Source of the DNA: Oopsacas minuta
Lineage: Eukaryota; Animalia; Porifera
DNA: 64,000 nt
Direction of reading: 5' to 3'
Assembly: GCA_024704765.1 (NCBI GenBank)
Contig: JAKMXF010000110.1
Location: 310,001-374,000, forward strand
The notes beneath the pieces were generated by a model that saw only the letters and a list, made by a program, of their open reading frames with translations, had not been told where the DNA came from and ran no database searches. Positions within the stretch are counted from its first letter, which is position 1, and each line of letters begins with the position of its first letter. Shown one piece after another: positions 17,301 to 25,354 of this stretch. A program made the translations under genes and the position numbers.

Positions 17301-20300
17301 AAACTGGAAATATTGTATATTTTGGGATTAATTCAAGTTTCAACCATACAGCCTAAACAATGAACTATCTTACGATATAATTGTTCTACAAAATATGAAA
17401 GTCCCCTTTAAACTGATCTAGAACTAATTCACTAATTTGTCTGGCCGGTACAATAATACATGAATCGTAACTCTGTATTAGGACTGATAGTATAGCTTTC
17501 ATACCAATGTTATGTTTAAATAACTTAGAAATGTGATACTTCGCGAATTGTATTAACTAGCAAAAATATAATACTTTCATACTTTTATAGTAATCTTTAC
17601 CGAGAACAAACGTTATTATTAGAATTAATTAAGTTTCTAATTTCAGGTGAACGAATCAATTTTAAAGAAATCGGAGATGTCCATCTAGCTGCTGTTCTAA
17701 TTAAAATGTTTCTCCGCGAAATGCCAGAGCCTTTACTAACACAAGAATTGTACGAACCAATGAAAACAATACATGGTAAGTTTTCCACCAGAAAGCTAAC
17801 ATTATCTATTATTATCTAGAATTCTGCATGTACATTATATAATGTTGAATACAAATACACGATAACTCATAGTTTCTGAGTAATACACTAAAATGTGTTC
17901 TTTCTACGGAGAACATAATAAATAATCAGCTGTTGATATTATTGAGTATTGGCTACCTAAAAAGCTACTATAGCCTATAAATTAATAAACTATGAAATCT
18001 GCTATAAGCGGCCAGTGATCTGACGGATAATATGAAGCGTATATCATAGACTTAACGTTTTCAGGGGTTTTAAAAAATCCTGATACTTCTAGCTTGTTCC
18101 CAGTATACCATATATAGTCCAATGTACTTTCATTGAGATCTCCGTCTGGGTTTACCCATTGGCAGGTATACTCTGGCTCTTTGATCTCTCCATATACGCT
18201 TTTGACTGGTATAACAGTCTGATTAGACATGTATTTGTAGCTTGGTTCTTCAGGGATATAATTAAAATCTCCTGCTATAATTATGTCATCACAATTAATA
18301 CTTTTTAATTTGTTAATTAAATCCTTTGACTGTGCTAGTCTTATTTCGTGTTTGTCGAGCATAGCTTTCAAATGTGTAACTGCAACTGTTATCCGTCTAG
18401 ATGTTGTTATATGCTCTAGCTCTGCGCTTAGAAGTACTTGGTTAGATGCCCTATTGAGCTCGTTAAGGAGAACGTATTCATGTTTCTCTAAGAACCTTAA
18501 GAAATACAGGTTAAATAAGGTAATACTCGGATAAGACGTACACTCGATAGTACGTACTACTTTTGTTTCCTGAATTGATACGTCTTATCCGAGTTCTACT
18601 GTAATCCAGAAAAAATATTTCTGGGATGTAAAAAGGAAGAAAAAATATCAATACCTAAGGTTACCTTTACTTACAATACATGACACCTCGAGAATTAAAC
18701 AATAAAATATATCGTCGTATGGTTAAATATTTATTTTCGCAGGTCGTTGGTTATTATTTCAGGTTAATCACTGCTCATAATTATATCATTAAATTTAGTG
18801 CAACTTAATGGAATAAAATGTAATTAATATTAACCCATTTGGCATAATTAATTATTTTTAATGAGTCATAAATTTACTAATCTATTATTGGAAATAATTA
18901 CAGTCATCTCGGTAATTACTTCGAAATAAACATAGTTTGATATCCTATGAATGTATGATACTTTGACGTTTTTGGGCCATATTTATACAATATTACACTT
19001 CGATATATCCGTGTTCTATATAATGGAAGTTATCTGTAATTAATTAATACCTGAATACTGTTTCTCTATAAAACAAAGCACATCCGCACGGTCCGATATT
19101 GTCAACCTGTTCCAGACACGGACTGTTCATTTTTGGTAAGAATTCCCCTACGAATCCCTGACCACTTAGAAATGGCTTAAAAAAGTCATAGAAGAGATCT
19201 GCTTCCTGAAGACATATTATATCAGGTTGATAGGCTAACAACTCACGCTGAAACAGAGGGACTCTTTCCTTTATAGGCTTAACTATGTCTGTACCCATTA
19301 ATGCTTGTGCTAAGACATTCCATTGTAACAGCCTAAAGGCATTATCACCAATCTCTTTATTACGAGATATGTAGACCCTGCAAGGAATTTCTTTTGTTGA
19401 TTTTCCTATCAGTTCTTTCGCATACTCACTTGCTAGCACTTGACAGGCTGTAGTCAATAATTGTTCTCGTGAAATTCCGCAGAATCGCCTGTGAAAATCA
19501 GCAGCAGGTATATGAGGATTTTCCTTCTGAATAACTTCCCCAGCTGTAATCTCATAGCCCGTATCTCTTAAATGATAACTCTTAGAAGTATCAGATTTTG
19601 CTTTTTCCATAAATTCCTTTGGTACAGAAATACATTGTGAGAAAGTATCTAGCTTAATACGATTGTGTGGGTCATCTATAGCAACACAACCTACATCGAA
19701 ATATGCTCCCGGTGATATCTCTGTAATGAAATTCTCAATTGAAACAGCTATACGTGAACTCCGTGGGTGAGAGAAGTATTGATTCCTGAGGTGACGGATA
19801 CGCCCCCATGCTCCTTCCCTCCCTGCCTCGAAGCCTATTGGCTGTGCAGCCACCTGATCTGGTATTGATATTCCCTCACATAGAACATTCTCGAATATTC
19901 TAGAAAACCCTCTTTTAACAGCTGCTATCTTTAAATCTTTTGTAGATGTAACTACTATTTCCATTGATCCAAGCTAATTACAGAAATCACTTAATACAGC
20001 CATCTCCTTCCGTTATAATGAAGCTCAAGGGGATCGAGATAATTACTTCGATCCCGTGAAATTTATGTTACTTTGACTGGGGACCATATTTGTACAATTT
20101 CAGACTTCGATATAACAGGAGTTGGATGTATACAGCCTTTTGTTAATGTGCTAAACTATATTGTCATTCAAATAATAACAGAAGAGCAAACTTTCAATTA
20201 ACACATAGTCATTGCAATATAGCTAGATTTGTTATTTGTAAGTTACGAGACTGTACTGTTGTTTATGAAATCTGATAAATTGTATAATTAAAGCTGTCAT

Positions 20301-23743: not shown

Positions 23744-25354
23744 ATGACTGAAATTAAAGAATCAATTCGATATCTTCAAGATGTAAATATAATCACAGCT
23801 CCTGCTTATGAGCTTGGAAGGGGAACATTTGGTGTTGTTTACAAGGCCAAATGGTTGGGTGCAAATGTAGCGGTGAAATACCTTCATTCTCATTTGTTCT
23901 CTCAACAACCTGAACGAGTTTGGAAAAAGATTGTCCGAGATTTTGAAAATGAATACAAGTTTCTTGCTAACCTGAGACATCCGAATATTGTACAATATTT
24001 TGGCCTCACGAAACAGAATGAAGCGATTGGAATTGTAACTGAACTTGCTTGGGGTAGTTTGTTCAAAAGAAATTATATGAAACCTCGTCTCACACTAAGA
24101 CACGTTGTAGACTGTGCTATTCAGCTTGGAGCTGGCCTGAGATATCTACACGAACAGAACCCACCAATTATCCACAGAGATTTCGCCTCTAAGAATGTTC
24201 TACTTGGATTCGATGGTCAAGCTAAAATCGCAGACTTGGGAGTTGCAACATTGGTATCACCACACGTTACACACATGACACAGAGTCCAGGTACTGAGCC
24301 TTACATCGCCCCAGAATGCAGAATCCACAAAACATACACAGAAAAAATTGATATATTCTCATACGCAGTTACCATTTTAGAACTTTGCACAAATCAAGTA
24401 CCTAAACCGAAAAATATGTTTCATTGTTCAGAAGACCCTAACACAGGAATTAGATCTATCACACAAGTACCTGAAGTTAACCGCAGAGAAAACGATTTGA
24501 GAATAATCGGTCCCACTCACTGTCTCTATAATATCATTCTAGAGGGAATCAAAGATGAACCAGAGGCTCGACCATCCGCTCACCAAATGCTCACTCTTTT
24601 AAATAAAATAAAATCAATCTCCGACTACACAAATTGCCCCAAAGAAGGCATACTTGATGGAATACAGCATCACCGTGAAAAAAATCTTCAACAACAAATA
24701 TACACAAAAGAAGCAGAAGTAATGCAAATGATGTATCAGCTCGAACAAGCTAAAAAGGATCTACAAAATATGAAAAATAATTTTATAGCAAAAGACAATA
24801 GTATGCCTTACAGACCAATAGCTCGTCCAAATTTATCATCAGTAGATCAAAAAATAAACCAACCAGATTTAACACTACAAATGGGCCCAAATACACCAAC
24901 AGATTCTATGTTACAACAGAGAATACAAAGACCAAAAGATCTACCTATACAGAAAAACAACCTTGTGATTAGAGGGAAGAAACATAACGATATGACGGCT
25001 CTCAAGGACCCTTATCCCAAAGCTTCACCAACACGAATGGACATATCAAAACAACTTAATCAATACGAATTACAGAGACAACAACAAATACAACAAGCTC
25101 AACTACAAGCTAAACCTCAAACACCTGTACTAAACTTGTTCAATCCACAATTTAATCAACTTATCCCAGAACACAGAATTCCCGTCTACTATATCCCAAG
25201 CAGACAATTGACAAACGATACCATGGATGTCAATAAAATGTACATTGTTCCAAACGCATACGACATGATTCCACGGGGGCAACCTCAAAGCATAGAAGTA
25301 TATCCTGTAACAGAAAATACAACTGCAAATTCATCCTTCACTCGGAGTTTTTAA
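23744..25354 (+). CDS. Intronless tyrosine-kinase-like (TKL) protein kinase with C-terminal coiled coil and Q/P-rich tail
   Basis: 536-aa ORF: LGRGTFGVVYKA, VAVK, LRHPNIV, HRDFASKNVLL, KIADLG, GTEPYIAPE, KIDIFSY; then heptad-like QQQIYTKEAEVMQMMYQLEQAKKDLQNMK. Confidence 0.9.
   Translation: MTEIKESIRYLQDVNIITAPAYELGRGTFGVVYKAKWLGANVAVKYLHSHLFSQQPERVWKKIVRDFENEYKFLANLRHPNIVQYFGLTKQNEAIGIVTELAWGSLFKRNYMKPRLTLRHVVDCAIQLGAGLRYLHEQNPPIIHRDFASKNVLLGFDGQAKIADLGVATLVSPHVTHMTQSPGTEPYIAPECRIHKTYTEKIDIFSYAVTILELCTNQVPKPKNMFHCSEDPNTGIRSITQVPEVNRRENDLRIIGPTHCLYNIILEGIKDEPEARPSAHQMLTLLNKIKSISDYTNCPKEGILDGIQHHREKNLQQQIYTKEAEVMQMMYQLEQAKKDLQNMKNNFIAKDNSMPYRPIARPNLSSVDQKINQPDLTLQMGPNTPTDSMLQQRIQRPKDLPIQKNNLVIRGKKHNDMTALKDPYPKASPTRMDISKQLNQYELQRQQQIQQAQLQAKPQTPVLNLFNPQFNQLIPEHRIPVYYIPSRQLTNDTMDVNKMYIVPNAYDMIPRGQPQSIEVYPVTENTTANSSFTRSF

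What the first reader, a model, noticed from the sequence alone, without database searches (positions are those of the whole stretch)
17982..19964. PRRC1/YjjX (ITPase-fold) domain fused to a nocturnin phosphatase in one polypeptide
Seen: one in-frame two-exon ORF. The fusion junction (about 19350-19410) lies inside exon 1, so it is not a splicing-model artefact. Known: the PRRC1 C-terminal domain belongs to the YjjX inosine/xanthosine triphosphatase fold, and nocturnin is an NADP(H) 2'-phosphatase of the EEP family; I know both only as separate proteins. The Pro-rich N-terminus of PRRC1 is absent. Inference: this may be a bifunctional nucleotide/cofactor house-cleaning enzyme coupling non-canonical purine NTP handling to NADP(H) dephosphorylation. 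It also gives Rosetta-stone support that the poorly understood PRRC1 domain acts in nucleotide metabolism.
Basis: partly seen in the sequence, partly recalled or inferred. Interest (0 to 1): 0.85.

Follow-up and report, generated by a model that had tools for sequence, protein, structure and literature searches.

The report
Glass-sponge PRRC1–nocturnin fusion enzyme
Glass sponges make one protein joining a little-understood nucleotide-binding domain (PRRC1 type) to the NADP(H) phosphatase nocturnin; the join is real, conserved and seemingly unique to them, so it hints that the two act in one pathway, though no activity was tested.

Summary
Window 17982-19964 (minus strand) is a two-exon gene for a 475-aa protein. 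It is identical to the NCBI entry 'Nocturnin [Oopsacas minuta]', a glass sponge.

- **Domains:** residues 1-189 are a PRRC1-type NTPase_I-T domain with the YjjX fold. Residues 191-475 are a nocturnin-type EEP phosphatase. The junction lies inside exon 1.
- **Conservation:** seven further sponge-holobiont assemblies carry intact orthologues. They share the junction, a phase-2 intron in the same codon, and a diverging kinase neighbour. dN/dS is 0.05-0.16 in both domains. It is therefore not an assembly or gene-model artefact.
- **Uniqueness:** a search of 1.84 billion protein representatives found no other protein covering both domains, and no paper mentions the fusion.
- **PRRC1's proline-rich region:** it is absent, and nothing upstream of the start codon is conserved.
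- **New detail:** all catalytic and metal-binding residues of nocturnin are kept. Both arginines that sandwich the adenine of NADPH in human nocturnin are replaced in all eight sponge proteins.
- **Caution on the N domain:** PRRC1-type domains, this one included, lack two Asn of the YjjX motifs.

'Bifunctional house-cleaning enzyme' remains a hypothesis, and the Rosetta-stone link rests on one lineage. I rate it a new variant of known kinds, of moderate interest.

The parts
19051..19964 (-). Coding exon 1: codons 1-304 plus two bases of codon 305. It holds the whole PRRC1-type domain, the junction and the first third of the nocturnin domain.
   Evidence: ORF, sequence, splice model equal to P0001. 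Conserved in 8 genomes.
19962..19964 (-). Start codon ATG. An in-frame TAG lies 4 codons upstream, at 19974-19976.
   Evidence: Upstream sequence is not conserved among the 8 loci, and several loci have in-frame stops there.
19398..19964 (-). PRRC1-type NTPase_I-T domain with the YjjX fold, residues 1-189.
   Evidence: Pfam PF01931 at 5.7e-15. Animal PRRC1 C-terminal domains at 35-42% identity. YjjX 1u5w at Z 20.2, rmsd 2.0 over 157 aa. dN/dS 0.05-0.16.
19338..19400 (-). Junction, residues 189-209, with the conserved motif GKSTKEIPCRVY. It is structurally already the N-terminal strand of the nocturnin catalytic domain.
   Evidence: Alignment. VIA aligns model residues 191-475 to NOCT 122-424. 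pLDDT is 67-77 here.
19051..19337 (-). Nocturnin-type EEP domain, first part (residues 210-305), with N216 and E254, which equals human E195.
18496..19050 (-). Intron of 555 nt, GT..AG, phase 2, within codon R305.
   Evidence: All 8 orthologous loci have the same position and phase, with intron lengths of 52-854 nt.
17982..18495 (-). Coding exon 2: nocturnin-type domain, second part (residues 305-475), plus the TAA stop. H346, D381, N383, D431, D464 and H465 are kept. M350 stands for human R290 and N420/P421 for human R367.
23744..25354 (+). Neighbouring single-exon protein kinase gene that diverges from the fusion gene. It is a synteny marker and not part of the enzyme.
   Evidence: ORF, Pkinase at 1.2e-40. 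It is 80% identical to the equivalent neighbour in L001. Pkinase neighbours also occur in L005, L006 and L008.

Best explanation
**What is shown.** This is a genuine gene of the glass sponge Oopsacas minuta, conserved in its relatives. It encodes one polypeptide with no targeting peptide in front of the domain. A PRRC1-type domain with the YjjX/ITPase-like fold (residues 1-189) runs almost without a linker into a nocturnin-type EEP phosphatase domain (residues 191-475). Both domains are under strong purifying selection. The nocturnin domain keeps its full metal-binding and catalytic residue set.

**What is inferred.** The C domain is an active Mg2+-dependent phosphomonoesterase. It probably removes a ribose 2'-phosphate from NADP(H) or a closely related 2'-phosphorylated nucleotide. 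The N domain is a nucleotide-binding module, possibly hydrolytic, that acts on or senses the same nucleotide or cofactor pool.

The fusion replaced two things: the N-terminal targeting and regulatory region of ordinary nocturnin, and the proline-rich region of ordinary PRRC1, which has been proposed but not shown to mediate its Sec23 binding. The loss of both adenine-clamping arginines in the nocturnin pocket suggests that base recognition was remodelled once the PRRC1 domain was attached.
For: **Gene and product**
- The gene model equals the NCBI protein.
- Both Pfam domains are present.
- The C domain matches human NOCT at E 1e-46, against 2.6e-10 for CCR4. Structurally it matches at Z 39.6, rmsd 1.7 over 277 aa and Foldseek 4.5e-32.
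- The N domain matches animal PRRC1 with E values down to 1.5e-37. The profile matches YjjX/VC0702 at 4e-11, and the fold matches YjjX at Z 20.2.
- The AF2 model has mean pLDDT 92 and pTM 0.78.

**Conservation**
- Eight genomes have the same junction, the same phase-2 intron and intact ORFs.
- Both domains show dN/dS of 0.05-0.16.
- The kinase neighbour is syntenic.

**Residues**
- The catalytic residues N216, E254, H346, D381, N383, D431, D464 and H465 are conserved in all 8 proteins.
- The invariant polar residues of the PRRC1 family (Q41, R55, E77, E82, D98, T126) and nearly invariant S7 are kept.
- The position of R290 is M in seven sponge proteins and K in one. The position of R367 is D, G, E or N. 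In the 32 other nocturnins aligned, position 290 is R or K in 31, and position 367 is R in 27 and K in two.

**Start of the protein**
- There is no conserved coding sequence upstream of M1.
Against: - No RNA evidence or enzymology could be obtained here.
- PRRC1-type domains differ from active YjjX at two conserved Asn: SxNxxK becomes SxKxxK, and GAxNR becomes GAeeR, or GAWGR in sponges. No catalytic activity of any PRRC1 domain is reported in the papers read.
- In human NOCT the adenine is held by R290 and R367, and mutations of pocket residues were detrimental. Their loss could mean weaker or different substrate use.
- The relative orientation of the domains could not be inspected because no coordinates or PAE were available.
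- The fusion occurs in one lineage only. Other in-frame fusions are noted in this compact genome, so physical fusion need not mean functional coupling.
Confidence: 0.6

Rival explanations
1. The N domain is a non-catalytic accessory module. It serves dimerisation, allosteric nucleotide sensing or localisation, and simply took the place of nocturnin's own N-terminal targeting and regulatory region. The enzyme is then a plain nocturnin with one activity.
For: PRRC1-type domains lack two Asn of the YjjX motifs, and the sponge version alters one motif further, to GAWGR. The only PRRC1 function reported in the papers read is regulation of COPII at ER exit sites, not catalysis. Nocturnin N-termini are known to vary and to act in targeting, by an MTS or by myristoylation.
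Against: The N domain is as constrained as the catalytic domain (dN/dS 0.05-0.16). It also keeps the invariant polar and charged residues of the family, which is more typical of a ligand or active site than of a mere scaffold. The proline-rich part, proposed but not shown to bind Sec23, is absent.
Confidence: 0.28
2. The fusion is an evolutionary accident of genome compaction, in which two adjacent genes merged. The two domains keep unrelated functions, so no Rosetta-stone inference about PRRC1 is valid.
For: The architecture is seen in one lineage only. Earlier notes of this scan record other in-frame fusions of unrelated domains in the same genome (unchecked).
Against: The junction is tight and conserved (GKSTKEIPCRVY). 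The fusion has been kept across lineages whose synonymous sites are saturated. The nocturnin pocket changed at two otherwise conserved base-binding positions in exactly this lineage. pTM of 0.78 hints at a fixed arrangement of the domains.
Confidence: 0.1
3. The feature is a gene-model or assembly artefact, or a pseudogene.
For: No transcript data were examined.
Against: The junction lies in a single 306-codon ORF. Eight independent assemblies made with different assemblers share the ORF, the intron position and intact 475-476-aa products under purifying selection.
Confidence: 0.02

Closest known systems
Nocturnin (human NOCT, Drosophila Curled), an NADP(H) 2'-phosphatase of the EEP superfamily
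   Same: The C domain is 35-43% identical to it and has the same fold (Z 39.6, rmsd 1.7). All catalytic and metal-binding residues are conserved. It is much closer to NOCT than to CNOT6L, PDE12 or ANGEL2.
   Different: It has no MTS or myristoylation N-terminus; a folded PRRC1-type domain sits there instead. The adenine-clamping R290 and R367 are replaced, by M or K and by D, G, E or N, in all 8 sponge proteins. Activity was not tested.
PRRC1 (proline-rich coiled-coil 1), an animal protein at ER exit sites that interacts with Sec23
   Same: The N domain aligns end to end with the C-terminal NTPase_I-T domain of PRRC1. All family-invariant residues are kept.
   Different: In PRRC1 the domain is at the extreme C-terminus, behind a proline-rich region of 150-380 aa. 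Here it is at the extreme N-terminus, the proline-rich region is absent, and a phosphatase follows. Identity is only 35-42%, whereas hemichordate and vertebrate PRRC1 domains are 64-71% identical to each other.
Bacterial YjjX / VC0702 (UPF0244, inosine/xanthosine triphosphatase; PDB 1u5w, 1u14, 1zno)
   Same: It has the same fold (Z 20.2, rmsd 2.0 over 157 of 162 residues). It shares the Ser/Lys N-terminal motif, the QP motif, the Arg and two Glu.
   Different: Two conserved Asn of the YjjX motifs are replaced in PRRC1-type domains. YjjX is a stand-alone protein of about 170 aa. Sequence similarity is weak (E 2e-5 for the single sequence).
Archaeal bifunctional pantetheine-phosphate adenylyltransferase / NTP phosphatase (NCBIfam NF002250)
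   Same: It is another natural fusion of an NTPase_I-T (DUF84) domain to an enzyme that handles an adenine-nucleotide cofactor. It matches the N domain weakly (E 0.029).
   Different: The partner enzyme is different (CoA pathway), the domain order is different, and it is prokaryotic. The match is far below the family cut-off, so it is an analogy only.
Plant CCR4C, a chloroplast NADP(H) phosphatase
   Same: It is a nocturnin-like EEP enzyme reported to convert NADP(H) to NAD(H) (abstract listed).
   Different: No NTPase_I-T domain is mentioned in the abstract. It was not compared here.

Membership tests
Nocturnin family (EEP superfamily) | EEP fold with the full catalytic and metal-binding residue set (human E195, H286, D324, N326 and the terminal SDH motif) | tested here: met
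   N216, E254, H346, D381, N383, D431, D464 and H465 are conserved in all 8 sponge proteins. The fold matches 6bt1 at Z 39.6, rmsd 1.7 over 277 aa.
Nocturnin family (EEP superfamily) | Closer to NOCT than to the other EEP subfamilies (CCR4/CNOT6L, PDE12, ANGEL) | tested here: met
   phmmer gives NOCT 1.1e-46, CCR4 2.6e-10, PDE12 5e-8 and ANGEL2 1.7e-4. Foldseek gives NOCT 4.5e-32 against CNOT6L 3.5e-24.
Nocturnin family (EEP superfamily) | Adenine of NADPH sandwiched by two arginines, R290 and R367 (Estrella et al. 2019, PMC6542800) | tested here: not met
   The R290 position is M in seven sponge proteins and K in one. The R367 position is D, G, E or N, with no basic residue nearby. Of 32 other nocturnins aligned, position 290 is R or K in 31, and position 367 is R in 27 and K in two.
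Nocturnin family (EEP superfamily) | NOCT-specific alpha5-beta5 motif, and Ala in place of the deadenylase Trp | tested here: inconclusive
   277 of 296 NOCT residues superpose at 1.7 A, and the sequence alignment has only small gaps. This argues against a deletion. The motif and the Ala were not located residue by residue.
Nocturnin family (EEP superfamily) | NADP(H) 2'-phosphatase activity | not testable with these tools
   This needs recombinant protein and an NADP(H) to NAD(H) assay.
NTPase_I-T / DUF84 (PF01931), PRRC1 subfamily | Pfam PF01931 match above the gathering score | tested here: met
   56 bits against a cut-off of 25, E 5.7e-15, residues 7-125.
NTPase_I-T / DUF84 (PF01931), PRRC1 subfamily | YjjX-type fold | tested here: met
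   1u5w_A at Z 20.2, rmsd 2.0, 157 aa aligned. HAM1 and Maf folds follow at Z 8-11. pLDDT is about 87-98 over residues 1-180.
NTPase_I-T / DUF84 (PF01931), PRRC1 subfamily | PRRC1-type signature residues across the whole domain of about 185 aa | tested here: met
   A39, Q41, P42, G44, A52, R55, E77, E82, D98, T126, G136 and G142 are invariant over 26 sequences that include the sponge proteins. The best hits are named PRRC1.
NTPase_I-T / DUF84 (PF01931), PRRC1 subfamily | PRRC1 architecture: proline-rich N-terminal region followed by a C-terminal domain | tested here: not met
   The domain starts at M1. The upstream sequence is unconserved and carries in-frame stops. An EEP domain follows instead of a C-terminus.
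YjjX-type inosine/xanthosine triphosphatase (TIGR00258 equivalog) | Score above the equivalog cut-off, and conserved Asn in the SxNxxK and GAxNR motifs | tested here: not met
   40 bits against a cut-off of 117. Both Asn positions are replaced in the PRRC1 family and in the sponge proteins.
YjjX-type inosine/xanthosine triphosphatase (TIGR00258 equivalog) | ITP/XTP hydrolysis | not testable with these tools
   This needs an enzyme assay.

The most novel reading that the evidence does not exclude
The two domains form one composite catalytic unit. The PRRC1-type domain supplies the purine-base binding that the nocturnin pocket lost (R290 and R367 are replaced). This would give a 2'-phosphatase with a new specificity, for instance for non-canonical or deaminated purine dinucleotides, NAADP or 2'-phospho-ADP-ribose. 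By extension, free PRRC1 and nocturnin would cooperate on the NADP(H) pool at the ER in other animals, which would give the PRRC1 domain its first biochemical role.
Probability: 0.12. Interest if true: 0.8.

Novelty: new variant of a known kind. Interest (0 to 1): 0.45.

Why it matters
The C-terminal domain of PRRC1 is conserved across animals, yet the papers read here report no biochemical function for it. Nocturnin's role as an NADP(H) 2'-phosphatase is recent, and its regulation is still being worked out.

A natural fusion of the two, kept under selection, gives a concrete and testable hypothesis: that the PRRC1 domain acts in purine-nucleotide or NADP(H) metabolism. It also provides a compact single-chain construct for biochemistry and structural work.

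The lineage-specific loss of the adenine clamp is a natural experiment on nocturnin's substrate recognition. The weight of the inference is limited because the fusion is confined to one animal lineage and nothing has been assayed.

Tried and rejected
1. **Composite alignments.** MAFFT alignments holding both PRRC1 and NOCT rows (A3, A4, A6, A8) placed 30-55 residues of the NOCT rows into the N domain. I rejected them. Only A5 (no PRRC1 rows) and A7 (8 PRRC1 rows) were clean.
2. **First AF2 run.** The run on A5 left the N domain below pLDDT 50 and was discarded in favour of the A7 model.
3. **Stand-alone PRRC1 in O. minuta.** Word-index searches were not informative. The search with the sponge N domain found only the fusion orthologues. 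The search with the Ptychodera PRRC1 domain listed only its 120 best hits, which include no sponge. The scan's notes have no entry for PRRC1, nocturnin, CCR4 or EEP. The question stays open.
4. **Identity of the ENA samples.** The BUSC20-1/SAMN144229xx contigs may come from the Vazella pourtalesii metagenomes (BioProject PRJNA613976). I could not confirm this from the paper or its supplements. The relatives are therefore called 'glass-sponge-like' on the basis of similarity and synteny only.
5. **Hits with two matched stretches.** I checked hits of the big search that had two matched stretches or long N-terminal extensions for a hidden second domain, and found none.
6. **A false literature lead.** One paper that seemed to mention PRRC1 was about PrrC170 and is unrelated.
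7. **Inter-domain interface.** It could not be examined because the model coordinates are not exposed.
Full report
**1. What is in the sequence**

On the minus strand, an ATG-initiated ORF runs from 19964 to 19044, and a second ORF piece ends at 17982. Reading the DNA gives exon 1 as 19964-19051, followed by GTATTAAT, and exon 2 as 18495-17982, preceded by TTCTTAAG.

Joining them gives 1428 nt, which is 475 codons plus TAA. The 555-nt GT..AG intron lies in phase 2 inside codon R305. The product is identical over its whole length to P0001, the NCBI/UniRef entry 'Nocturnin [Oopsacas minuta]'.

**2. Domain identities**

- Pfam finds NTPase_I-T (PF01931) at residues 7-125 (E 5.7e-15). It finds Exo_endo_phos split over the two exon products. 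NCBIfam gives only sub-threshold matches to YjjX-type inosine/xanthosine triphosphatases.
- Against PDB sequences, residues 210-472 match human nocturnin at E 1.1e-46. That compares with 2.6e-10 for yeast CCR4, about 5e-8 for PDE12 and 1.7e-4 for ANGEL2. Residues 2-84 match the YjjX homologue VC0702 at 2e-5.
- An AlphaFold2 model built on a checked alignment (A7) has mean pLDDT 92 and pTM 0.78.
- In a structure search not dependent on Foldseek, residues 191-475 superpose on human nocturnin (6bt1, Z 39.6, rmsd 1.7 over 277 aa). Residues 1-189 superpose on E. coli YjjX (1u5w, Z 20.2, rmsd 2.0 over 157 of 162 aa). HAM1/ITPase and Maf folds follow at Z 8-11. Foldseek agrees for the C domain.

**3. 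The N domain is PRRC1-type, not simply bacterial YjjX-type**

In the exhaustive phmmer search of 1.84 billion representatives, every strong hit to residues 1-190 is a protein of 270-574 aa whose match lies at its extreme C-terminus. The named ones are PRRC1 or PRRC1-like proteins of a hemichordate, a sea urchin, snakes, a frog, a nemertean and an oyster.

The sponge domain aligns end to end with them at 30-42% identity. It keeps all twelve family-invariant residues: A39, Q41, P42, G44, A52, R55, E77, E82, D98, T126, G136 and G142.

A profile of this family matches the YjjX structures at 4e-11 to 1e-9. The alignment shows that the two conserved Asn of YjjX (SxNxxK and GAxNR) are replaced in PRRC1-type domains. 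They become SxKxxK and GAeeR, and the second is GAWGR in the sponges. The PRRC1 domain is thus a diverged branch of the fold whose catalytic competence is unknown.

The only PRRC1 function I found in the literature is recruitment to ER exit sites, interaction with Sec23 and modulation of COPII. The authors suggest that the proline-rich region may make the Sec23 contact (PMC8536394).

**4. The proline-rich part is really absent**

The sponge protein begins with the first strand of the domain. In O. minuta an in-frame TAG lies four codons upstream. In the eight orthologous loci the upstream sequence is not conserved at the protein level, and several carry stops within a few codons.

**5. The fusion is conserved and under selection**

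Seven further assemblies of sponge holobionts in ENA carry orthologues, giving loci L001, L002 and L004-L009. These are long AT-rich, intron-bearing contigs produced by several different assemblers. L004 and L005 hold the same sequence, and one sample contributes two distinct orthologues, so there are seven distinct orthologous sequences besides O. minuta.

- Each locus has an exon-1 ORF with the NTPase_I-T domain plus the first part of the EEP domain. An exon-2 ORF with the rest of the EEP domain follows on the same strand.
- The donor lies after the same two bases of the same Arg codon, and the acceptor lies before its third base, in all loci. All introns are GT..AG, with lengths of 52-854 nt.
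- All spliced products are intact at 475-476 aa.
- The junction motif GKSTKEIPCRVY is conserved.
- For pairs with unsaturated synonymous sites, pairwise dN/dS is 0.05-0.16 in the PRRC1-type domain and 0.12-0.15 in the nocturnin domain. Between the deeper clades dS is saturated.
- A diverging protein-kinase gene lies upstream in the window (23744-25354) and in L001, L005, L006 and L008. The O. minuta and L001 kinases are 80% identical.

These facts exclude an assembly join, a gene-model artefact and a pseudogene. I could not establish which species the ENA samples are. One set may be Vazella pourtalesii, but that is unconfirmed.

**6. The architecture is otherwise unknown**

- In one search, apart from the sponge cluster itself, no protein matched both halves of the query.
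- Hits with two matched stretches or long extensions carry only one of the two Pfam domains.
- All 120 listed PRRC1 relatives of a hemichordate PRRC1 domain carry PF01931 alone.
- No paper in the library links PRRC1 or NTPase_I-T with nocturnin or mentions the sponge protein.
- Distant fusions scoring below about 87 bits in total would not have been seen, so a remote analogue cannot be excluded.
- NCBIfam does list an archaeal fusion of this NTPase domain with pantetheine-phosphate adenylyltransferase. That is another enzyme of an adenine-nucleotide cofactor, but it is only an analogy.

**7. A new detail: the nocturnin pocket is altered**

In human nocturnin, E195 coordinates the metal. The adenine of NADPH is sandwiched between R290 and R367, and mutations of pocket residues were detrimental (PMC6542800).

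I aligned the eight sponge proteins with 32 other nocturnins from the search. All catalytic positions are conserved: N216, E254, H346, D381, N383, D431, D464 and H465 in O. minuta numbering.

The R290 position is Met in seven sponge proteins and Lys in one. The R367 position is Asp, Gly, Glu or Asn, with no basic residue nearby under either plausible local alignment. In the other 32 nocturnins, position 290 is R or K in 31. Position 367 is R in 27 and K in two; two of the other three rows are misaligned here, and one carries Val.

So the chemistry is probably retained, but base recognition changed in exactly the lineage that acquired the PRRC1-type domain.

**8. How it most likely works**

Shown:
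- It is one polypeptide with two folded domains joined almost without a linker.
- Both domains are under constraint.
- The EEP catalytic machinery is complete.

Inferred:
- The C domain is a Mg2+-dependent phosphomonoesterase acting on a ribose 2'-phosphate of NADP(H) or a close relative.
- The N domain binds, and perhaps hydrolyses, a purine nucleotide, and works on or senses the same pool.
- The protein is cytosolic, because nothing precedes the first strand of the domain.

The pTM of 0.78 for a 190 + 285-residue protein suggests a defined mutual orientation. I could not inspect the interface.

Rivals:
- The N domain may be a non-catalytic regulatory, dimerising or localising module.
- The fusion may be a functionally neutral product of genome compaction. 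Earlier notes of this scan record other in-frame fusions in this genome (unchecked).

**9. Verdict**

The domain assignments and the uniqueness claim are supported. The functional reading, a bifunctional house-cleaning enzyme that gives Rosetta-stone evidence for PRRC1, is a reasonable but untested hypothesis. Two things temper it: the divergence of PRRC1 domains from YjjX at motif residues, and the altered nocturnin pocket.

It is a new variant built from two known kinds. It is already present in databases under an automatic name but is not described. Interest is moderate: it offers a concrete handle on the unknown PRRC1 domain, but it rests on one lineage and no assay.

Noticed in passing
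window 23744-25354 (+): A single-exon 536-aa protein kinase gene diverges from the fusion gene. It has a Pkinase domain at residues 23-283 and a long Q-rich, low-complexity C-terminal half. It is 80% identical to its counterpart in L001, and the neighbour is conserved in at least four related assemblies.
   Followed up: partly
L006 and L009 (both from ENA sample ERZ25072730): One sponge-holobiont assembly holds two different orthologues of the fusion gene. One is on a 1.6-Mb contig at 434x coverage and the other on a 16.6-kb contig at 3x. The second is closest to L002 from another sample. Two sponge genomes, or a contaminant, seem to be present in that sample.
   Followed up: no
L001-L009, intron after codon 304/305 of the fusion gene: The single intron keeps its exact position and phase in all relatives, but its length ranges from 52 nt (L001) to 854 nt (L008). 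It is 555 nt in O. minuta, whose genome is otherwise compact.
   Followed up: partly
L007 orthologue (ENA ERZ25766962): This orthologue alone has GDLN instead of GDFN at the D324/N326 motif. It also alone has Lys rather than Met at the position of human R290.
   Followed up: no
N domain, window 19398-19964 (-), NCBIfam result: The domain gives a weak match (E 0.029) to the archaeal 'bifunctional pantetheine-phosphate adenylyltransferase/NTP phosphatase' family, NF002250. That is a second natural fusion of a DUF84/NTPase_I-T domain to an enzyme of an adenine-nucleotide cofactor (CoA), and may be worth a comparative look.
   Followed up: no
PRRC1 relatives (P0021, P0208-P0324): The PRRC1 C-terminal domain is strongly conserved among deuterostomes: hemichordate against vertebrates is 64-71% identical. 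The glass-sponge domain is only 35-42% identical to any of them. Either it diverged very early or it evolved faster after the fusion.
   Followed up: no
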